A DNA stretch of 64,000 bases from Macrostomum lignano (lineage: Eukaryota), in assembly GCA_002269645.1 (NCBI GenBank), contig NIVC01003285.1, positions 42,584 through 106,583 on the forward strand, read 5' to 3'. Positions 908 to 61,363 of the stretch are shown piece by piece. The notes beneath the pieces are model-generated. The model saw only the letters and a list, made by a program, of their open reading frames with translations, ran no database searches and was not told where the DNA came from. The first letter of the stretch is position 1. The number at the start of each line of letters is the position of its first letter. The position numbers and the translations under genes were made by a program.

Positions 908-1029
908 CACGCCTATGCAGAAGCTGAAAAATGGGGAAAGAAAATTCCCTAAGAAACTGATGCTTTTCCCAGCCCCAATGACCTATGCAGATTTTAAAAA
1001 CAGTGTCAGACAAATCTAATCGCCTTGTC
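908..1029 (+). repeat. Left TIR (122 bp)
   Basis: Reverse complement of 3756-3877. Contains CCTATGCAGA twice (912-921, 982-991). Confidence 0.93.
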
Positions 1030-1415
1030 CAAAAATAATAGAATGGAAAATTGAAATTATGTGTTCTCAGCTGCATGTTCAGTATTAGATTCGTCAGTTG
1101 CGCCATTGCAAGTAGTGAAAACAATTGCGTAACAAGAGCAGGCATCAATTGCAAAGTTTAGAGCATAAATTTAAGGGCGTCATAAAATGCTGTACATTAT
1201 TAGATAGAAATTTTGGCAGACAACTCAAATGTACATATTTATTGAGATCTATTGTGATTAAGGGATTGAGAAACAATGAACAGACTATGTACATTCATAA
1301 AGTAGAACATGCCTCTTATCACAAGTTTGCTAACACGCAGACTTCCTTTGAAAATAAAGTTGCAGTCAATTGAAACAATTACCCTCAGTACTCAAATCAG
1401 TTCTCTGGCCTCGCG

Positions 1416-3476
1416 ATGCCAAACTTTCGACGCACACATGAAGAGAATCGTATCTGGTGCTGCATCCTCTGCTTCCGCAAAGCCGATCGCGTTATTTCAG
1501 CTGCTCAGGCAGAACTCATCGAGCAATTTATCCTGCCAGAATTCTGTCATGCCTACATCCGTAATACTCTGCCAGGAGGCATGTGCAGCTGCTGCAGCAA
1601 GAAATTGCAGTCACAGACGTCACCTGTACCGCAAGAACTGCCTGCTCGACTGCCATACCTTCAAATTGTTGCAGATTTGGAGGTTTTGCCACAACTCACA
1701 CGTGAGCATCCGCACTGCTCCTGCTGTATCTGCCAGGTAGTTTCCAGCCCATCAAACAAGCGGGTGGCGGTCTGGCACCCATACATGTCTGACAGCAGCC
1801 GGGCCAACCATAAATTGCCCCAAGGACGACCTGCAGAAACAACTCGAAGCCAGGACAGAGACTCGGAGAAGCGCTGCACTAGGTGCCACTCACTTGTGGG
1901 CAAAGGCCTAAGGCACGAGTGCAGCGTCTCCAGCAAGTTGCAGTACCTGCGCACGCTCAGCCCTACATCAAAAGAGCACATCGCTCATGACGTGATGCGT
2001 GAAAAGCTAAGAGCAGCAGCAGCATCAGGACATGGATCAACGGCTTCTATTTCCAGCGCCACCGGTGGCCCACCAATGCAGCTGAGGCATGCAAGTGATT
2101 CAAATGAGCAGAGAGCGCTGAGGACCGAGACACTAGTAACGTTAAAGACATCTCTCAATCTGAGTGACCGGCAGACAAACATGGCAGCCACAATTATCAG
2201 GCAGGCGGAGGGCAGTCGTAAGGCCGTGCAACCCGGACTGCGGGCAGCTCTGGCAGCCGCAGGCAGCATCGCGGAGAGTTTTTTTGAGATGCGGCAGCTC
2301 AAATTCACTCAAAAGTCCTCAGGTGGCAGCTTTACTGATACCACAAGATGTTCCGTCATATGCCCCGATCTGCAGGGCCTGCTGAGCTTCATTTGCTCAA
2401 AGCGAGGATTTAGTGAGTTCGATGTGAGATTGAAGCTGGGGATGGACGGAGGTGGTGGCTCGCTAAAAATCTGCCTTAGTGTCGCCCCAGTACTGCCTAC
2501 CGAACCACAGGCAGAGTCCACACCTAAGAAGCTGAGCAGGGAGTCGCGAATAAGCAACTTTGGCGTAAAAAAACTGTTTATCATCGCGATTGCTGAGGAT
2601 GTCCAGGAGAACTATGCAAATGTGCGAGCACTTCTAGATGAGCTAGACTTGACATCGATTAAGTTCACAGTCGCTTGCGACTTCAAGCTAGCCAACATCC
2701 TGTGTGGCCTTCAAAGTCATGCCGCAGCTCATCCTTGTCTCTACTGTGAGGGGCAGGCGCCGTGGCAAGTTGCCGGTTCCATAAGAACCCTTGGATCCAT
2801 TCGTCGGATGGCCACGGCATTCGAGGCTGCTGGTAGCTGCCAGCGACTGGCAAGAAACTACGCAAGCTGTGTCAGACAGCCTCTTCTCCCTGGGGCTGAT
2901 TCTACGCCAATGCTGGACCTCGTGCCACCACCAGAGCTGCACATCATGCTTGGTGTGACCAACAAACTGCTCGATCAGCTGAACTCAGCTTGGGGCGACG
3001 ACAAGGCATACAAGTGGGCGCATTCAGCTGGAATCTGTCGCGAGCAGTACCACGGCGGGTGTCTGGAAGGCCCTGCGTGTGTCAGATTGCTGCTTAAAGC
3101 TCAAGAGCTCAAGAGCAACCTGCCATCAAGGCTCCAGGGCTATGCGTCTGCTCTCATGGCATTCGATGCTGTTCGCCAAGCATGCTTTGGGCAACAGCTG
3201 ATGAGCGACTTTTGCCAGAAGATTGCCCAGCTGGAATCCTGCTGCGCTGAACTGAAGCTGGTGCCGACACCTAAGATGCACGCCCTTTTCCACCATGTTC
3301 CGGAGTTCTGCGAGCGATTCAACTCAGGCCTTGGGACCTTCAGTGAGCAGGCAGTCGAGTCTGCACACAGCGACTTTCGTTCGACGTGGCAGCGGTTTCG
3401 CAGGCCTCTGGGGCATGTGCAGTATGCAGAATGCCTGCTGCGCGCAGTTGTTAGCTACAATTCCAGCCATATTTGA
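1416..3476 (+). CDS. DDE transposase, 686 aa, Chapaev-like N-terminal Zn motif plus Transib/RAG1-like core
   Basis: N-terminal H-x7-CxxC...P-x3-CxxC (HEENRIWCCILC...PGGMCSCC). Core motifs GMDGGG (D344), ACDFKLANILCGLQSHAAAHPCLYC (D422, CxxC), PELHIMLG, TPKMHALFHHVPEF and GTFSEQAVESAH (E648). These parallel RAG1/Transib GMD..YDEK..ICTLC..LHCDIG..HKTLAHVPE..ASEGNES. Confidence 0.88.
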   Translation: MPNFRRTHEENRIWCCILCFRKADRVISAAQAELIEQFILPEFCHAYIRNTLPGGMCSCCSKKLQSQTSPVPQELPARLPYLQIVADLEVLPQLTREHPHCSCCICQVVSSPSNKRVAVWHPYMSDSSRANHKLPQGRPAETTRSQDRDSEKRCTRCHSLVGKGLRHECSVSSKLQYLRTLSPTSKEHIAHDVMREKLRAAAASGHGSTASISSATGGPPMQLRHASDSNEQRALRTETLVTLKTSLNLSDRQTNMAATIIRQAEGSRKAVQPGLRAALAAAGSIAESFFEMRQLKFTQKSSGGSFTDTTRCSVICPDLQGLLSFICSKRGFSEFDVRLKLGMDGGGGSLKICLSVAPVLPTEPQAESTPKKLSRESRISNFGVKKLFIIAIAEDVQENYANVRALLDELDLTSIKFTVACDFKLANILCGLQSHAAAHPCLYCEGQAPWQVAGSIRTLGSIRRMATAFEAAGSCQRLARNYASCVRQPLLPGADSTPMLDLVPPPELHIMLGVTNKLLDQLNSAWGDDKAYKWAHSAGICREQYHGGCLEGPACVRLLLKAQELKSNLPSRLQGYASALMAFDAVRQACFGQQLMSDFCQKIAQLESCCAELKLVPTPKMHALFHHVPEFCERFNSGLGTFSEQAVESAHSDFRSTWQRFRRPLGHVQYAECLLRAVVSYNSSHI

Positions 3477-3755
3477 TGTCAAGCATTTTCATGCCTGCAA
3501 AGATTTCTAGGATTTAGCTTGTGTACTTAATATCCATGCACACTTTATTCCATACGGACATTAGCAATAATAAGTGCATGGTTCTCATTTTATAATATTA
3601 ATACTAATACAGTTGCACGTTCCTTTAATGATTAAAATTAATATTAAAACTACGAACTTATATTAACATTAATATTATCGATGGGTTTCGCCTTAAATAC
3701 CTATCATATTACATGTAATTTGCATATAATATAAAAAATTCATATTACCATTTTT

Positions 3756-3877
3756 GACAAGGCGATTAGATTTGTCTGACACTGTTTTTGAAATCTGCAT
3801 AGGTCATTGGGGCTGGGAAAAGCATCAGTTTCTTTGGGAATTTTCTTTCCCCATTTTTCAGCTTCTGCATAGGCGTG
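3756..3877 (-). repeat. Right TIR (122 bp)
   Basis: Reverse complement of 908-1029. Confidence 0.93.
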
Positions 3878-5110: not shown

Positions 5111-6147
5111 CTCTCGGTTAAATTTACTTCCACTACATATCGGACGCGACGCTATAGGAATTTTATATATTTGCTTCCAACACAGTACGTAGATGTTTAT
5201 ACTCGTAACAGCTTGTGCAAGGAAAGATCACCGCGGACTACTTACGATCTAAATAGAAGGACGCACAAAGCATACAAATTTTATTGGAGACTGATTATTC
5301 AATTTGATGTAGCCCGGGCTCCAGAAACTCGTCGAAATGTAGTTTGTCTACATGTAATTTAGGGTAAACGACTCTTATATAGTAGTCTGTGGGAAAGTTG
5401 CGAATAAAAATATTTCGCACACGCAAAAAAACCAGTAAAATATCCAAATATGATGCACACAGAAATCTGCAGACTGCAGCATGGGACGAGGAGATAAAAA
5501 GTAGCTTTTCAACTCTTCAAGGTCTTCTACGTCTTCAAGATAAAACTGGTTCGCCCATGCGCTGTGGATTCACGCTAAAAGCCTTCTCCATGTCTGCACG
5601 ACCTAAAAAGGAAATGATTGACAAATTTGGACCGGAACAGAAACTGTTTTACAACTAAATTATTCAACAAGTGTTTGCCCTTGTCATTTTCTCCTTGTTA
5701 AGATCGGTGGCTCATCTTCTAACTGCCAACCAAGAAGAAAGCAAAAAGTCATCAAAAGACTAAATTTTAGTTTTTGAATGGGTCCAAATGAACAATAATG
5801 ATAAAATGATAATTTGATAAAATGAAATTTTAACAAAGGCAAGGCACTCATTTTAATTTGAATCATTTTAATTTGTGCTGCAAACGAGCATAATGAAACC
5901 ACGAAGAACCTACGGTCAATTTCTGGCATAAAAGTTCCCGGTGTACTGGCTGCCATTACGGCGGGGAGTTTGCTTGAAGTTTGAAGTCGTGCTTATTCTT
6001 GTCCTAGCAAACATCGCAAAGAGCGTCTTTCCCGTTTTAACAATCGAGCCAGCATGAATTATTGAAGATGCAAGCATCGACTCGGCTCGCTGTCAAAAGA
6101 TCCAGTCGAGAAGCTGTTGAGCAACGCAGCGCACTCAAGCTCGGCTG

Positions 6148-6153
6148 TATAAA
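6148..6153 (+). promoter_or_regulatory. Candidate TATA box of the prohormone gene
   Basis: TATAAA about 125 nt upstream of the ATG. Supported by position only. Confidence 0.3.
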
Positions 6154-6274
6154 TGCGCCGGTCCAGTCCGAGAACCCGGAGTCCTCGCAGAGAACATTTT
6201 TTGCAGAACAAGCTGCTGCAGACACAGAGAGTCGGTCTCAATTCCAAACCACTGAAGCCCGTAGAAGCTGCAAC

Positions 6275-6975
6275 ATGATCTCAGGCCCCCTACTGCTGCT
6301 CCAAGTGATGCTGGCGGCATTCGCTATTCAGGAAACCATGGTAAGCATCTGGTTCTGCATCAGTGGCAATTTAAAATGGCCAATTGCAGCTTCACTTGAA
6401 TGGCCCCTCTGTTGTACAAATTGCAGGCGAGCCCGTCGCATTCCGCCCTAGACAGAAGAGAGTACCTGCTGCAGTCGCTGATTCAGTCCTTCATCGATCA
6501 GGAAGTGCACTACGATGGCCAGCGCAAACGGGCCGCAGCCTTGGAGCGCCTGGTGAACCTTGATGTGCTGCCGGACGGCCGGCGCAAGAGAGGCGGCAGC
6601 ATCAGCGAGCTGGAACGGCTCCTGAAGATAATGGAGGTGGAATCGCGCGGCAACAGCCCCATCCGCCGGGCGGCCTATTTCCCGCCCAACCTGCCGCTGG
6701 ATCTGGACGTCCTGCCAGACGGCCGACGCAAGCGAGACATGCCCGATTGGACCCGAATCATCGGCATGAACACCAACTACGACGGACGTCGCAGGAAGCG
6801 ATCCAACTACAAGAAGAGCCTGGCCGTCTACAGCAACCTGCGCCCCCTGATCGCGCCCGACATCATCCACATGGGCAAGCGCCACACTGACACGGTTGGC
6901 GGCGGCCACCGGCGCAAGCGACTGCTGGACACTCTGGTCAGGGCGCGGCCGATTTTCGATGGCAAGCGAGGCTGA
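6275..6975 (+). CDS. Secreted neuropeptide/prohormone precursor, 204 aa; join(6275..6340,6427..6975)
   Basis: Exon 1 MISGPLLLLQVMLAAFAIQETM is signal-peptide-like and ends at GTAAGC. Acceptor TTGCAG at 6426 is in phase 0. Exon 2 has repeated Gly plus basic cleavage sites (DGQRKR, DGRRKR x2, DGRRRKR, MGKR, DGKR). Confidence 0.82.
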
Positions 6976-7025
6976 GCAACAGCTGCATGCCTCATCAAAT
7001 CAACAAAATTTGAATGCCGAACCCC

Positions 7026-7031
7026 AATAAA
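7026..7031 (+). terminator. AATAAA polyadenylation signal
   Basis: Canonical hexamer about 50 nt after the prohormone stop codon. Confidence 0.55.
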
Positions 7032-7353
7032 AGACAGATGACAAATAAGTAGCTTTCATAGCAACGAGAGCGCAGTTTGAGCTCGAAAAATACACGGGTA
7101 ACACGGATCTCATTTTTTTGAAGAGATCTACTATGCGGAATGCTTCTTCTGGCTAAGAAATGTTAAAATTGTCACCGAACCAGTCGCTCTGCAACGCGCC
7201 AGCTGGCAAGTTAAAAGCCCAATCTGAAAAGCTGAATTCATGAAAGCTCGTATAAAGTAAGGACCATGCGAGATAACCGAATGACTGAACACTACGAATA
7301 ATCTGTTTCGAATGATTAAATCTTGATTTTAAACCAAATTTCGATTGCTAATA

Positions 7354-7838
7354 CCAAATCCCTATGATCCCAAACAACCGAATCCCGATTATCCCAAATA
7401 CCGAATCCCGATTATCCCAAATACCGAATCCCGATGATCCCAAATAACCGAATCCCCATGATCCCAAATAACCGAATCCCGATTATCCCAAATACCGAAT
7501 CCCCATGATCCCAAATAACCGAATCCCGATTATCCCAAATACCGAATCCCGATTATCCCAAATACCGAATCCCCATGATCCCAAATAACCGAATCCCGAT
7601 TATCCCAAATACCGAATCCCGATGATCCCAAATAACCGAATCCCGATGATCCCCAATACCGAATCCCGATGATCCCAAATAACCGAATCCCGATGATCCC
7701 CAATACCGAATCCCGATGATCCCAAATAACCGAATCCCGATGATCCCAAACACCGAATCCCGATGATCCCAAATAACCGAATCCCGATGATCCCAAATAC
7801 CGAATCCCGATGATCCCAAATACCGAATCCCTATGATC
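7354..7838. repeat. Minisatellite, 23-24 bp (CCGAATCCCGATGATCCCAAATAA)
   Basis: About 20 tandem copies seen. Confidence 0.95.
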
Positions 7839-8424: not shown

Positions 8425-9075
8425 AAGGGGATAGTTTGCATTCTAAGGGGATAATGTGCATTCTGAAGGGATAATGTGCATTCTGAAGGGATAATGTGAA
8501 TTCTGAAAGGATAATGTGCATTTTGAGGGAATAATGTGCATTCTGAAGGTATAATGTGCATTCTGAGAGGATAATGTGCATTCTGAATGTATAATGTGCA
8601 TTCTGAAGGGAAAATGTGCATTCTGAAGGGACAATGTGCATTCTGAGAGGATAATGTGCATTCTGAAGGTATAATGTGCATTTTGAAAGGATAATGTGCA
8701 TTCTGAGAGGATAATGTGCATTCTGAGAGGATAATGTGCATTCTGAGAGGATAATGTGCATTCTGAGAGGATAATGTGCATTCTGAGAGGATAATGTGCA
8801 TTTTGAAAGGATAATGTGCATTCTGAGAGGATAATGTGCATTCTGAGAGGATAATGTGCATTCTGAGAGGATAATGTGCATTCTGAGAGGAAAATGTGCA
8901 TTCTGAGAGGATAATGTGCATTCTGAGAGGATAATGTGCATTCTGAGAGGAAAATGTGCATTCTGAGAGGATAATGTGCATTCTGAGAGGATAATGTGCA
9001 TTCTGAGAGGAAAATGTGCATTCTGAGTGGATAATGTGCATTCTAAGGGAATAATGTGCATTCTAAGGGAACAAT
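8425..9075. repeat. Minisatellite, 20 bp (ATAATGTGCATTCTGAGAGG)
   Basis: More than 30 tandem copies. Confidence 0.95.
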
Positions 9076-10542: not shown

Positions 10543-17613
<7,071 letters not shown>

Positions 17614-18389: not shown

Positions 18390-19523
18390 TTAGAATCGAT
18401 ACTCAATAGTCTCCACGCCGCCAGTTGAGCACACCTGATAGTGCACGCTGGCATCGTCAACTATGGCAAACAGAAGGTCCACGCCGATGCCGGCCGAACC
18501 GCCAGCAGCCAGCAGCTGCAGAGCGCGCACCCCGACGGGGCAGGGCGGAGTTGAGTCAACGTCTACAACAGCCAGTCGATAGTCGGGCAGAGCCGCCCCG
18601 GCTGCCGTGCGTCGCCGCCGGTGCCCCGGCCGGAAGACGTCGAAATCAACGCGAGCGAGCTGGCCGCTGCAAACCGAGCATCGGCAATCTTCACCCGACT
18701 CTGAGCCAACTGGAATCTCTGGCAATGACATTCGTTGAAGAGCTTCGCGAGTTGTTAAACAAGCCAGGTCCTGCCAGGGCAGCAGCGGCCCGGGCAGCGA
18801 CTCGCCCATAGGAAAACTAGCCGACTGAAGCTCGCGAGCGATCGCTGGAACTACAATGGCCGAGCTTGCTGCCCGATATTCGGACCAAGAGGCGGCTCTG
18901 CTAGGATCAATTTCAGCAGCGGCACCGGTTGAGGAAGGCAGACCGGCGTCAATACGCCGTTTGGGCCGATTTGACAGATCAATAAAGAACTGGCGCGACT
19001 CAGCCACAGCTGAGGGTGGAGCCTGAGCTGCCGCTGTAGGCCCCCTGGGTGACGGCGAATGCCTGACCAGCCTGTAACCAGCTCGAACCAGTCTGGCATA
19101 CGCTAACCAACGTTTAAACTCTAAAGGCGACGTTAGAAAAGTCTGATAGGCCTGCTGTATGGACAGCGGCAATCCGCCAAATTCTACTAGCAATTTGCCC
19201 AGCTCCATCAGCACTAGCGCCTCCTCCGGGTGCAGCAGAGTGGCGCCATCTGTTTGGCGCCGCCAGCCAAACTGGCCAGAGAATTTGGCGCGGCCGGACA
19301 CAAGCACTTGGCACTGATTGGGCAGCCATTCGCCTTTGGCTAATTGATTTGGCGATGCGCTGCGCTCCTCTGTTAAGGTGAGCCGCCACCTGGCCATTGC
19401 CAAGTCAACTTCTGATTTGCTACTGTCAGAGTTGGCGTCGCGCCAATGCCGTTTGAGTCCGCCAGTCTCTGGCAGGCTGCTGGACTTTGGCTGGCGGGCC
19501 AGCAGATCGCGGCCAACTAGCAT
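18390..19523 (-). CDS. TSEN54: tRNA-splicing endonuclease subunit Sen54, 377 aa, single exon
   Basis: Sen54 N-domain motif FGW...LLHPEEALVLMELGKLLVEFGGLPLSIQQAYQ...LAYARLVRAGYRLVRH. C-terminal FDVFRP...PDYRLAVV...LFAIVD. Confidence 0.8.
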   Translation of the reverse strand: MLVGRDLLARQPKSSSLPETGGLKRHWRDANSDSSKSEVDLAMARWRLTLTEERSASPNQLAKGEWLPNQCQVLVSGRAKFSGQFGWRRQTDGATLLHPEEALVLMELGKLLVEFGGLPLSIQQAYQTFLTSPLEFKRWLAYARLVRAGYRLVRHSPSPRGPTAAAQAPPSAVAESRQFFIDLSNRPKRRIDAGLPSSTGAAAEIDPSRAASWSEYRAASSAIVVPAIARELQSASFPMGESLPGPLLPWQDLACLTTREALQRMSLPEIPVGSESGEDCRCSVCSGQLARVDFDVFRPGHRRRRTAAGAALPDYRLAVVDVDSTPPCPVGVRALQLLAAGGSAGIGVDLLFAIVDDASVHYQVCSTGGVETIEYRF

Positions 19524-25656: not shown

Positions 25657-26644
25657 ATGGTTTTCGGATGCACAACATGCAAGCCCAACGAAGCGCTAAT
25701 TATTACAGGCAAGAAATTAAAACCGACGTCCTAAATTCAGAACAAATTAAAACTCGTATATTAGTTTAGACTTATACTCGGATATATAGTTTTTATCCTC
25801 AACACTTTAACATACCAAAAGAAACAAACAGTCGAAGAAACTCTGAAACAGATATCTAAGATAATCTAACCAATGATTCGTGACGTCGTGCGAGGCTTGA
25901 GTCACTACAGTCTACAGAGATAAATACTCTGCAGAAAAAATGCAATTATTATCTGTTGCTTTTAGAGTAATACTTTTTTCATCTAAAGAAAAATGTGGCT
26001 CAGATCACGCCTATTCGAGCGCTATTTATATTGCACTCAAAGTTGACATTTCTTTGAAAAATTATATATACGAGCGTACTGTATTGATACTTTTACCATG
26101 TACATGTGCATTATTCTATCAGATATATGCCGACGAATTTATTTCATCAACTCAATGCTTTCCTACAGGTTGCTGTTATCAATCACCGGTGTTCGTTACC
26201 AATGGATGGAAATGTACGATTCCTGGCATACATAAAGTCCAACGGATGCCTCTGAACGTAATGAAAATCACAGTTGAATCGCCAAGAATTTATGCCAAGC
26301 CGGGTGTAACTATTTCTGTAAACGGCCTATCAGAAGTTCGAATAAATGGCTGGAATCAAGACATGCTGGCAGTGGCTTTCGACAATTTTTTAGGTAAGAA
26401 AGAACACGAGATTGAAGCAATCGTCAAAGAGAAATTGGAGGCCCAGCAAAGCGCTATCATTAGGCAAATGTCAATTGACGAAATCTACATGGATAGAAGA
26501 AAGTTCTGCACAGCCTTCTTCAATGCCGCCTCGGCAGATCTCGAACGAATTGGCATTTCCGTGTTGTCCTACAGGCTGGAAGAAGTCAGCGATGAGGATG
26601 GCTACCTGAAAGCACTGGGAGAGGCGCGTCTCCGGCTCAGCTGA
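25657..26644 (+). CDS. Divergent truncated flotillin paralog (SPFH domain only, 175 aa; possibly a pseudogene); join(25657..25708,26169..26644)
   Basis: MVFGCTTCKPNEALIITG|CCYQSPVFVTNGWK...LERIGISVLSYRLEEVSDEDGYLKALGEARLRLS*. Collinear with FLOT1 up to the start of the coiled coil. GC-AG intron at the same 52-nt position as in FLOT1. Confidence 0.7.

Positions 26645-32413: not shown

Positions 32414-34474
<2,061 letters not shown>

Positions 34475-37773: not shown

Positions 37774-61363
<23,590 letters not shown>

What the first reader, a model, noticed from the sequence alone, without database searches (positions are those of the whole stretch)
6275..6975. Prohormone predicted to release several peptides ending in Asp-amide
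After a signal peptide, convertase sites would release AAALERLVNLDVLPD-G, AAYFPPNLPLDLDVLPD-G, DMPDWTRIIGMNTNYD-G, LLDTLVRARPIFD-G and ...PDIIHM-G. A further peptide ends HYDGQ and may escape amidation. Gly before basic residues is the established amidation signal. C-terminal Asp-amide is uncommon among neuropeptide families I know, and the tetrabasic RRKR sites are furin-like. I recognise no named family; resemblance to PDF/cerebrin-like peptides is weak. This is a candidate new peptide signalling system.
Basis: partly seen in the sequence, partly recalled or inferred. Interest (0 to 1): 0.75.

Follow-up and report, generated by a model that had tools for sequence, protein, structure and literature searches.

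The report
Flatworm prohormone for Asp-amide peptides
This is a real two-exon gene of the flatworm Macrostomum lignano that encodes a small secreted precursor built to release five C-terminally amidated peptides, four of them ending in the unusual Asp-amide; it has no named family or published study, but it is otherwise an ordinary kind of neuropeptide gene.

Summary
Window 6275-6975 (+) is a two-exon gene: exon 1 at 6275-6340, an 86-nt GT..AG intron, and exon 2 at 6427-6975. It encodes a 204-aa protein with a hydrophobic leader, then peptide units each ending in Gly plus a di- to pentabasic site. The protein is 100% identical to Macrostomum lignano PAA59577.1 (BOX15_Mlig009364g2). NCBI calls it 'hypothetical protein'; UniRef calls it 'Neuropeptide'. 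G-basic-basic motifs occur 5 times against 0.6 expected, and D-G-basic-basic 4 times against 0.05. The two LDVLPD-G-RRKR copies differ by 6 synonymous and 0 non-synonymous changes. Only one distant homologue exists in about 5.8 billion proteins, a probable mRNA contig from an unidentified organism. It keeps the same architecture, with ends such as ...PDITHD-G, ...PDIIHD-G and LLDSLVRARPIYN-G. No Pfam family matches. None of the 51 planarian prohormones carries a D-G-K/R site. Resemblance to PDF/cerebrin is limited to a Pro-Asp pair in the same register and is not significant. Asp-amide has a mass-spectrometry precedent in the annelid Platynereis (THDamide). Best reading: a lineage-restricted, multi-copy amidated neuropeptide precursor. 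Expression, processing and receptor remain untested. It is a new member of a known kind, of moderate interest.

The parts
6148..6153 (+). TATAAA box, the probable core promoter. It overlaps the upstream ATG (6153-6155) that public gene models use as a start codon.
   Evidence: Read directly from the sequence. There is no further ATG between 6156 and 6274. Its function as a promoter is inferred.
6180..6274 (+). Probable 5' untranslated leader; boundaries are approximate and assume a transcription start about 30 nt after the TATA box.
   Evidence: The paralogous copy L002 carries a 2-bp deletion at 6222-6223, which changes the reading frame here. This region therefore cannot be conserved coding sequence.
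6275..6340 (+). Exon 1: start codon plus 22 codons, MISGPLLLLQVMLAAFAIQETM, forming the signal peptide.
   Evidence: hydrophobic maximum at residues 6-16. The homologue L001 starts directly with a signal peptide after an in-frame stop.
6341..6426 (+). Intron: 86 nt, GT..AG, phase 0.
   Evidence: Intron GC is 0.44 against 0.63 for exon 2. The junction is used in public models P0001, P0003 and P0004.
6427..6975 (+). Exon 2: the propeptide with all peptide units and the stop codon (TGA at 6973-6975).
   Evidence: GC at third codon positions is 0.81. The exon is identical in copy L003 and differs by one synonymous change (6432) from copy L002; exon 1 carries the other two.
6460..6522 (+). Unit 0: EYLLQSLIQSFIDQEVHYDGQ, followed by RKR. 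It is the same kind of unit, but Gly is followed by Gln, so it is predicted not to be amidated.
6532..6579 (+). Unit 1: AAALERLVNLDVLPD-G, followed by RRKR. Predicted product is AAALERLVNLDVLPD-NH2.
   Evidence: The core LDVLPDGRRKR (6559-6591) differs from its second copy by synonymous changes only.
6592..6663 (+). Spacer GGSISELERLLKIMEVESRG-NSPI, followed by RR. It looks like a decayed copy of unit 1: it shares LERL and ends in Gly, but no basic site follows the Gly.
   Evidence: right-justified alignment. This is an inference.
6670..6723 (+). Unit 2: AAYFPPNLPLDLDVLPD-G, followed by RRKR. Predicted product is ...LDVLPD-NH2.
   Evidence: core at 6703-6735.
6736..6786 (+). Unit 3: DMPDWTRIIGMNTNYD-G, followed by RRRKR. 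Predicted product is ...NTNYD-NH2.
6817..6876 (+). Unit 4: SLAVYSNLRPLIAPDIIHM-G, followed by KR and preceded by SNY-KK. Predicted product is ...PDIIHM-NH2. It corresponds to ...KKSLQ...LLRPDIIHD-G in the homologue.
6922..6963 (+). Unit 5: LLDTLVRARPIFD-G, followed by KR-G-stop. This is the best conserved unit; the homologue has LLDSLVRARPIYN-G.
7026..7031 (+). AATAAA, the probable polyadenylation signal, beginning 51 nt after the stop codon.
   Evidence: Read directly from the sequence. Its function is inferred.

Best explanation
The gene is a classical secretory prohormone of Macrostomum lignano, and its family has so far been seen in only one other, unidentified organism.

Proposed mechanism:
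- The 22-residue exon-1 leader takes the protein into the ER and is removed.
- In the regulated secretory pathway, subtilisin-like convertases (furin/PC2 type) cut after the RR, RKR, RRKR, RRRKR and KR sites.
- A carboxypeptidase removes the basic residues.
- The amidating enzymes use the exposed C-terminal Gly to leave an amide.

Predicted products:
- AAALERLVNLDVLPD-NH2
- AAYFPPNLPLDLDVLPD-NH2
- DMPDWTRIIGMNTNYD-NH2
- (SNYKK)SLAVYSNLRPLIAPDIIHM-NH2
- LLDTLVRARPIFD-NH2
- non-amidated by-products, including EYLL...HYDGQ

The units are paralogous copies of one ancestral unit of roughly L-x-x-L-[LIV]-x-P-D-[IV]-[IL]-[HYF]-D-amide. The peptides are most likely released by neurons or neuroendocrine cells and act on an unidentified receptor, by default a GPCR.

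Shown here: the gene structure, the motif architecture and its enrichment, purifying selection on the peptide core plus its processing site, and conservation of the architecture in one relative.

Inferred, not shown: signal-peptide cleavage, the actual cleavage and amidation, the cell type, the receptor and the physiological role.
For: - Gene and species: the protein is 100% identical to M. lignano PAA59577.1, and UniRef names it 'Neuropeptide'. Three near-identical genomic copies keep the protein unchanged; copy L002 differs by 3 substitutions in the CDS, all synonymous.
- Architecture: a hydrophobic leader, no Cys, no Pfam domain, and 204 aa. G-basic-basic occurs 5 times against 0.59 expected, and D-G-basic-basic 4 times against 0.05.
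- Selection: the two LDVLPD-G-RRKR copies differ at 6 of 33 nucleotides, all synonymous. The chance of that is about 5e-4 if changes fell at random. Meanwhile the N-terminal halves of the same two peptides have diverged.
- Conservation: the only relative is L001/P0002 (239-aa ORF; E = 8.7e-7; BLASTP 1e-10). It has a signal peptide and eight units ending in Gly followed by a basic residue; seven have a cleavable two-to-four-residue basic site and the eighth...PLPD-GK, has Lys then Ser. The final unit is nearly identical: LLDSLVRARPIYN-G against LLDTLVRARPIFD-G. Right-justified on the amidation Gly, the 14 units of the two species share L(-12), L(-9), P(-6), D(-5), I(-3), H/Y/F(-2) and D(-1). 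Nine of the 14 end in Asp.
- Machinery: M. lignano has a PC2 homologue expressed in the nervous system whose knock-down is lethal. GYIRFamide-type staining of its nervous system has been described (PMC4490696). PAM needs only a C-terminal Gly (PMC6313938).
- Asp-amide is feasible in a spiralian: Platynereis ARGGPIAAPLWFLKTHD-amide, from a D-G-K-R site, was detected by mass spectrometry (PMC3890597 supplement).
Against: - No expression, peptidomic or receptor data for this gene were found in the held literature.
- Only one relative is known and its organism is unidentified, so conservation rests on two sequences.
- The penultimate residue can strongly affect enzymatic amidation efficiency (PMC11608224). 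From my own recollection of PAM substrate studies, acidic residues are poor substrates. Some product may therefore stay Gly-extended.
- The tetrabasic R-R-K-R sites fit furin, an enzyme of the constitutive pathway, so processing does not by itself prove a neuronal origin.
- The signal peptide was judged without a dedicated predictor.
Confidence: 0.75

Rival explanations
1. It is a highly divergent, multi-copy orthologue of the protostome PDF/cerebrin precursor. The peptides would then act on a class-B PDF-type receptor.
For: - Register: spiralian PDF/cerebrin peptides (13 precursors from the PMC8557429 supplement; oyster NLGTVDSLYNLPDLLYRamide) carry Pro-Asp-[Leu/Phe] at -6/-5/-4 from the amidated end. 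This is the register of ...LRPDIIHD-NH2 and ...LGPDITHD-NH2.
- Other likenesses: the lengths are similar (13-19 against 17-18 residues). 'LLDSL'/'ALERL' recall the conserved 'TVDSL'.
- Co-linearity: the PDF HMM aligns residues 14-57 of the M. lignano protein with the PDF-associated region ending at the KR before the peptide.
- No competitor: no canonical cerebrin from a flatworm turned up in a profile search of 5.8 billion proteins, so the orthologue's place is not visibly taken.
Against: - HMM scores are 1.9 and 1.1 bits, and about 2.5% of shuffled sequences do as well.
- hhalign probabilities are 0.4%, 1.3% and 10.5%. The aligned stretch is mostly the generic Gly-basic site.
- The Pfam scan, which would be expected to include any PDH/PDF model, reported no family at all even at E = 10.
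- The invariant N-x-G-T-x-D start and the N-[LM]-P-D core are absent.
- PDF/cerebrin precursors carry one peptide each in all 13 examples; this one carries six to eight units.
- The C-terminal residue is aliphatic in PDF/cerebrin and Asp here.
Confidence: 0.1
2. It is a prohormone-like precursor of a non-neuronal secretory gland, for example prostate, adhesive, rhabdite or epidermal glands. Its amidated peptides would act outside the body as defensive, antimicrobial, seminal or pheromonal peptides, not as neuropeptides.
For: - The R-X-K/R-R sites are optimal for furin, which works in many cell types (established knowledge).
- The best-known natural Asp-amide, the frog-skin opioid dermenkephalin/deltorphin A, is a gland product (my recollection, not tested here).
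- The family is taxonomically very narrow, as is common for secreted effector peptides.
- No neuronal expression data were found.
Against: - The peptides are neither cationic-amphipathic nor Cys-rich; they are acidic or neutral and Leu/Pro/Asp-rich.
- The architecture of many different short amidated peptides with a conserved C-terminal core matches flatworm npp/spp neuropeptide genes (PMC2953531).
- One source already labels it 'Neuropeptide', though the basis for that name is unknown.
Confidence: 0.12
3. The motif pattern is a coincidence in a gene whose product is not processed, or the open reading frame is not a real gene.
For: No direct transcript or peptide evidence for the M. lignano gene could be examined here.
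Against: - Motif enrichment is far beyond shuffles.
- Only synonymous differences separate the paralogous gene copies and the internal repeats.
- GC at third codon positions is 0.81.
- The TATA box, GT-AG intron and AATAAA are all in place.
- A homologous contig in another organism, probably a transcript, has the same layout.
Confidence: 0.03

Closest known systems
Flatworm multi-copy amidated prohormone genes (the npp/spp genes of Schmidtea mediterranea and parasitic flatworms; Collins et al. 2010, PMC2953531; McVeigh et al. 2009, not readable here)
   Same: The same kind of gene: a small precursor with a signal peptide, several related short peptides flanked by basic sites with Gly amidation donors, no other domain, conservation concentrated in the peptide cores, and many families restricted to flatworms. 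PC2-dependent processing has been shown in planarians, and a PC2 homologue is essential in M. lignano.
   Different: No sequence relationship was found. None of the 51 planarian prohormones has a D-G-K/R site or the LLDSL/RPIY/PDII words. The planarian family list has RL/RM-, RF-, RRVV- and W-amides but no Asp-amide. Exhaustive profile searching finds no flatworm relative other than the one unidentified contig.
Platynereis dumerilii THDamide proneuropeptide (Conzelmann et al. 2013, PMC3890597)
   Same: A spiralian precursor whose peptide ARGGPIAAPLWFLKTHD-amide comes from a D-G-K-R site and was detected by mass spectrometry. It shows that Asp-amide neuropeptides exist in spiralians. Its -THD-NH2 end is identical to two units of the homologue L001 (...PDITHD-G). 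It was also reported as species-restricted.
   Different: It has two peptide copies rather than six to eight. Smith-Waterman similarity to either precursor is no better than shuffles: 697 and 219 of 2000 shuffles reach the observed score. Homology is not supported.
PDF / cerebrin family (pigment-dispersing factor of arthropods and nematodes; cerebrin of molluscs, annelids, brachiopods, phoronids and nemerteans)
   Same: Amidated peptides of 17-18 residues with a Leu-rich N-terminal half and Pro-Asp at -6/-5 from the amidated end. A helical-looking segment lies between the signal peptide and the first peptide.
   Different: PDF/cerebrin precursors carry a single peptide. Their N-x-G-T-x-D...N-[LM]-P-D-L signature is absent here. 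They end in an aliphatic rather than an Asp amide. Profile tests are not significant.
Lineage-specific multi-copy peptides (MCPs) of acoels and other xenacoelomorphs (review PMC13551398)
   Same: Conceptually the same phenomenon: taxon-restricted multi-copy peptide precursors with no bilaterian orthologue.
   Different: A different phylum. No sequence comparison was made or claimed.

Membership tests
Classical neuropeptide / peptide-hormone precursor (prohormone) | N-terminal cleavable signal peptide | tested here: met
   Hydrophobic maximum at residues 6-16 (Kyte-Doolittle 2.55), with A-F-A and T-M-A candidate sites. The homologue has MLLSRATVLLLAQLLLAAGLVSA|S. No SignalP was available, so this was judged by hydrophobicity and the -3/-1 rule only.
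Classical neuropeptide / peptide-hormone precursor (prohormone) | Several related peptides flanked by mono-, di- or polybasic convertase sites | tested here: met
   Ten basic sites and six to seven related units. The basic-pair count is 14 against 6.4 in shuffles.
Classical neuropeptide / peptide-hormone precursor (prohormone) | Gly immediately before the basic site, acting as amide donor | tested here: met
   Five G-basic-basic sites against 0.59 expected. The homologue has seven against 0.61.
Classical neuropeptide / peptide-hormone precursor (prohormone) | Conservation concentrated in the peptide cores and processing sites rather than in the spacers | tested here: met
   6 synonymous and 0 non-synonymous differences between the two LDVLPDGRRKR copies. 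The cross-species alignment is conserved at unit ends and in the last unit.
Classical neuropeptide / peptide-hormone precursor (prohormone) | Mature peptides detectable; expression in neurons or endocrine cells; a cognate receptor | not testable with these tools
   No expression, peptidomic or receptor data for this gene in the held literature.
PDF / cerebrin | Significant match to a profile of PDF/cerebrin precursors | tested here: not met
   The HMM of 13 spiralian precursors gives 1.9 and 1.1 bits, and 127 and 117 of 5000 shuffles do as well. hhalign probabilities are 0.4-10.5%. Pfam reports no family at E up to 10.
PDF / cerebrin | Peptide signature N-x-G-T-x-D-[SA]-[LM]-x-N-[LMI]-P-D-[LF]-x-x-x-amide, one copy per precursor | tested here: not met
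   Only P-D-[IL] at -6 to -4 is shared, and only by some units. There are six to eight units per precursor rather than one.
PDF / cerebrin | Signals through a class-B PDF receptor | not testable with these tools
   No receptor assay or M. lignano receptor inventory was available.
Known planarian prohormone families (51 Smed genes, Collins 2010) | Shared peptide motif or sequence similarity | tested here: not met
   String searches of the supplementary sequence tables found no DGKR, DGRR, DGRKR, DGKK, HDG, LPDG, DGK, LDSL, RPIY or PDII. The single DGR is the tail of npy-1. The HMMER profile search of 1.84 billion representatives finds no planarian or parasite protein.
Platynereis THDamide | Precursor-level sequence similarity | tested here: not met
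   Smith-Waterman scores of 28 and 36 against shuffle means of 26.6 and 29.3. Only the terminal -THD-NH2 and the D-G-K-R site are shared.

The most novel reading that the evidence does not exclude
The gene founds a peptide family restricted to macrostomorph flatworms (or a slightly wider clade). Its pharmacophore is a C-terminal [H/Y/P]-Asp-amide, and it acts through its own, still orphan receptor. That would make it a new ligand-receptor system, not a divergent copy of a bilaterian one. A less likely but more interesting variant is that it is the missing flatworm PDF/cerebrin gene, expanded to multiple copies.
Probability: 0.45. Interest if true: 0.5.

Novelty: new member of a known kind. Interest (0 to 1): 0.35.

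Why it matters
Macrostomum lignano is a transgenic, RNAi-amenable flatworm model, but no neuropeptide catalogue for it could be found in the literature available here. This gene offers concrete, synthesisable candidate ligands for receptor de-orphanisation and for behavioural or regeneration assays. It also adds a second spiralian case, after Platynereis THDamide, in which a C-terminal Asp-amide appears to be the conserved end of a bioactive peptide. That bears on how tolerant invertebrate amidating enzymes are of acidic penultimate residues. Finally, the public gene models carry artefactual N-terminal extensions that bury the signal peptide, which would hide this gene from secretome or neuropeptide-prediction pipelines. 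Beyond that, it is one more lineage-restricted neuropeptide gene in a phylum already known to have dozens, and it does not change any general picture.

Tried and rejected
- Pfam scans of both precursors at permissive thresholds: no family.
- Word-seeded searches of 5.8 billion proteins with the M. lignano protein and with the homologue: only the M. lignano cluster and one Logan contig.
- Exhaustive HMMER profile search of 1.84 billion representatives: only those same two.
- JGI metagenome scan with back-translated motifs: 90 pattern matches, none confirmed.
I scored both precursors against 10,000 shuffles and ran hhalign three ways. None of these was significant. A PDF/cerebrin profile search for a canonical flatworm gene found only molluscs, an annelid and unnamed contigs.
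- Platynereis THDamide homology: not significant.
- Planarian prohormone tables: no D-G-K/R site and no shared words.
- Literature searches for the peptide strings, gene and protein accessions, the SRA run and M. lignano neuropeptide catalogues: nothing.
- McVeigh et al. 2009, which mined M. lignano ESTs, could not be read. I cannot exclude that this gene was given an npp number there.
- By-eye resemblances to pedal peptide/orcokinin/FCAP (N-terminal xLDSL) and to insect NPLP1 (xLAR) were considered and dropped as leads from memory. They cover three to four residues only, and no profile for these families was built or scored.
- The antisense ORF at 6448-6909 was dismissed as a shadow of the GC-rich coding frame.
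- Structure prediction was not attempted, because a processed, Cys-free prohormone has no fold to compare.
Full report
**What is there**

Window 6275-6975 (+) holds a compact two-exon gene.
- Exon 1 (6275-6340) encodes MISGPLLLLQVMLAAFAIQETM.
- An 86-nt phase-0 intron (6341-6426, GTAAGC...TTGCAG) follows.
- Exon 2 (6427-6975) encodes the remaining 182 residues and the TGA stop. The protein is 204 aa.
- A TATAAA box lies at 6148-6153 and an AATAAA at 7026-7031.
- No ATG lies between 6156 and 6274.
- Exon 2 has GC 0.81 at third codon positions, against 0.41 overall in the flanks and 0.44 in the intron. That is a clear coding signature.

**Whose gene it is**

- The protein is 100% identical over its full length to Macrostomum lignano PAA59577.1 (BOX15_Mlig009364g2, 'hypothetical protein').
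- It is also identical to UniRef entries A0A1I8IQX0 and A0A1I8GNF9, which are named 'Neuropeptide'. So the window is M. lignano, a free-living flatworm.
- Two further genomic copies were fetched (L002 and L003). Both are about 98% identical to the window over several kilobases.
- L003 is identical to the window from 6149 to 7340.
- L002 differs by three substitutions in the CDS (6334, 6337, 6432). All are synonymous, since the proteins are identical.
- L002 also has a 2-bp deletion at 6222-6223 in the leader.
- That indel explains why the public models disagree upstream of MISGPLLLL. Each model simply extends the open frame to a different upstream ATG.
- One of those ATGs (6153) overlaps the TATA box.
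- The homologue in another organism starts directly with its signal peptide after an in-frame stop.
- I conclude that translation starts at 6275 and that the annotated N-terminal extensions are artefacts.

**Checking the observation**

  - AAALERLVNLDVLPD-G
  - AAYFPPNLPLDLDVLPD-G
  - DMPDWTRIIGMNTNYD-G
  - (SNY-KK-)SLAVYSNLRPLIAPDIIHM-G
  - LLDTLVRARPIFD-G
  - EYLL...HYDGQ, where Gln follows the Gly
- Against 20,000 residue shuffles of the mature region, G-basic-basic occurs 5 times versus a mean of 0.59 (2 shuffles reach it).
- D-G-basic-basic occurs 4 times versus 0.05 (none reach it).
- The most hydrophobic stretch of the protein is residues 6-16, followed by A-F-A and T-M-A, either of which fits the -3/-1 rule.
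- The protein has no Cys and no Pfam domain.

**Evidence that the peptides, not just the frame, are under selection**

- The 11-residue block LDVLPD-G-RRKR occurs twice, at 6559-6591 and 6703-6735.
- The two DNA copies differ at 6 of 33 positions, and all six differences are synonymous.
- Only 28% of possible single-base changes in these codons are synonymous, so six out of six has a probability of about 5e-4.
- The N-terminal halves of the same two peptides have diverged (AAALERLVN against AAYFPPNLPLD).
- This is the pattern expected when the C-terminal core and its processing site carry the function.

**Relatives**

- The word-seeded search of 5.8 billion proteins found one relative besides the M. 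lignano cluster: P0002 (E = 8.7e-7, 30% identity). It comes from a Logan assembly of run SRR30276812.
- The 1085-nt contig (L001) has no intron at the position of the M. lignano intron and ends in an Illumina adapter, so it is probably a transcript.
- Its full ORF (129-848, 239 aa) begins MLLSRATVLLLAQLLLAAGLVSA and yields these units:
  - ...GILGPDGIHE-G
  - ...LLLGPDITHD-G
  - ...LLRPDITHD-G
  - ...KKSLQ...LLRPDIIHD-G
  - ...PLPD-GK
  - LLDSLAMARPIHS-G
  - FLETLARVRPIHQ-G
  - LLDSLVRARPIYN-G
- The last unit is almost the same as the M. lignano one.
- Right-justified on the amidation Gly, the 14 units of the two species share Leu at -12 and -9 and an aliphatic residue at -8. They also share Pro/Asp at -6/-5, Ile/Leu at -3, His/Tyr/Phe/Pro at -2 and Asp at -1. 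Nine of the 14 units end in Asp.
- The spacer GGSISELERLLKIMEVESRG-N looks like a decayed copy of AAALERLVNLDVLPD-G.
- A HMMER profile of the family, run without any word index against 1.84 billion representatives, returned only these two proteins.
- A JGI metagenome scan gave nothing.
- I could not identify the organism of SRR30276812.

**Comparison with known families**

*Planarian prohormones.*
- The supplementary tables of Collins et al. 2010 list 51 Schmidtea prohormones.
- They contain no DGKR, DGRR, DGRKR, DGKK, DGK, HDG, LPDG, LDSL, RPIY or PDII. The only DGR is in the tail of npy-1.
- Their family table has no Asp-amide class.

*Other spiralian precursors.*
- Thiel et al. 2021 collected about 1300 nemertean, brachiopod and phoronid precursors.
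- DGKR occurs 11 times and DGRR once in that collection.
- The contexts displayed were insulin-like, achatin-spacer and PTTH sequences. None was the end of a repeated peptide.

*PDF/cerebrin.*
- Spiralian cerebrins (N-x-G-T-x-D-[SA]-L-x-N-[LM]-P-D-[LF]-x-x-x-G) put Pro-Asp-Leu at -6 to -4, the same register as ...RPDIIHD-G.
- The cerebrin 'TVDSL' also recalls 'LLDSL'.
- I built HMMs from 13 published precursors. The two flatworm-type precursors score 1.9 and 1.1 bits, values reached by 2.5% and 2.3% of shuffles.
- The best alignment is co-linear but worth only 0.5 bits.
- hhalign gives probabilities of 0.4%, 1.3% and 10.5%, and what aligns is mainly the Gly-basic site.
- A profile search with the cerebrin alignment found 16 proteins. 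All the named ones are mollusc or annelid, and no flatworm was among them.
- Membership is therefore not supported. It stays a lead at about 10%.

*Platynereis THDamide.*
- ARGGPIAAPLWFLKTHD-amide, from a D-G-K-R site, was observed by mass spectrometry (PMC3890597).
- This is direct evidence that a spiralian makes Asp-amide neuropeptides.
- Its last three residues equal those of two L001 units.
- Precursor-level similarity is no better than chance.

**How it most likely works**

- Shown: a secretory-type leader; repeated, selected peptide cores each followed by Gly and a convertase site; the same architecture in a second organism.
- From established knowledge of the regulated secretory pathway: convertases cut after the basic sites, a carboxypeptidase trims them, and the amidating enzymes convert -X-Gly to -X-amide.
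- PAM requires only the C-terminal Gly (PMC6313938), although the penultimate residue can strongly affect efficiency (PMC11608224).
- M. lignano has a nervous-system PC2 homologue whose knock-down is lethal, and it has amidated FLP-type immunoreactivity (PMC4490696).
- Inferred: release from neurons or neuroendocrine cells and action on an unknown receptor.
- I put 0.75 on this reading, about 0.10 on a divergent PDF/cerebrin orthologue, about 0.12 on a non-neuronal gland peptide precursor, and about 0.03 on coincidence or a non-gene.

**Novelty and verdict**

- The gene is already deposited, and one source labels it 'Neuropeptide'.
- I found no family assignment, no paper and no experimental data.
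- I could not read McVeigh 2009 or Koziol 2016, where it might carry an npp number.
- It is a new, lineage-restricted member of a very well-known kind of gene.
- The Asp-amide ends are a real but not unprecedented oddity. Interest is 0.35.

Noticed in passing
window 908-3877: A 2.97-kb insertion that is absent from both paralogous loci L002 and L003. It is bounded by 127-nt terminal inverted repeats (98% complementary) and contains a 686-aa ORF (1416-3476, +) with no Pfam match. It looks like a DNA transposon that is polymorphic between gene copies or haplotypes.
   Followed up: partly
window 6062-6274, and proteins P0001, P0003, P0004: The public gene models extend the protein 34-69 residues upstream of the signal peptide, in different frames in different copies. 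A 2-bp indel at 6222-6223 separates the copies, and the upstream ATG at 6153 overlaps the TATAAA box. The extensions are probably annotation artefacts that would hide the signal peptide from secretome predictors.
   Followed up: yes
whole window, e.g. 7353-7838, 8429-9064, 11288-12149, 32854-34221, 48457-50135, 56602-58005: The window is packed with about 45 distinct minisatellite or microsatellite arrays (periods 4-47 nt, up to about 340 copies). They produce strong local GC/AT skews and many spurious long ORFs.
   Followed up: no
window 10543-11130 (-); L002 10839-12821; L003 10384-12803: The next gene downstream, on the opposite strand, encodes an ICA69/arfaptin-domain protein. Its position next to the prohormone gene is kept in all three copies. 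From general knowledge, ICA69 is linked to dense-core vesicle biogenesis, so the adjacency is a curiosity, probably a coincidence.
   Followed up: no
window 18390-19523 (-), 25940-26644 (+), 60287-61363 (+): Other recognisable coding pieces in the window are a Sen54 tRNA-splicing endonuclease subunit N-terminal domain, a Band 7/SPFH domain and a fibronectin type III domain.
   Followed up: no
window 6592-6663: The 'spacer' GGSISELERLLKIMEVESRG-NSPI shares LERL and a terminal Gly with the preceding peptide AAALERLVNLDVLPD-G but has lost the basic site. It appears to be a decayed repeat unit.
   Followed up: partly
window 6199-6206: A strong acceptor-like tract (TTTTTTGCAG) sits in the 5' leader. 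From memory, M. lignano trans-splices many mRNAs to a spliced leader, so this could be a trans-splice acceptor. This was not tested.
   Followed up: no
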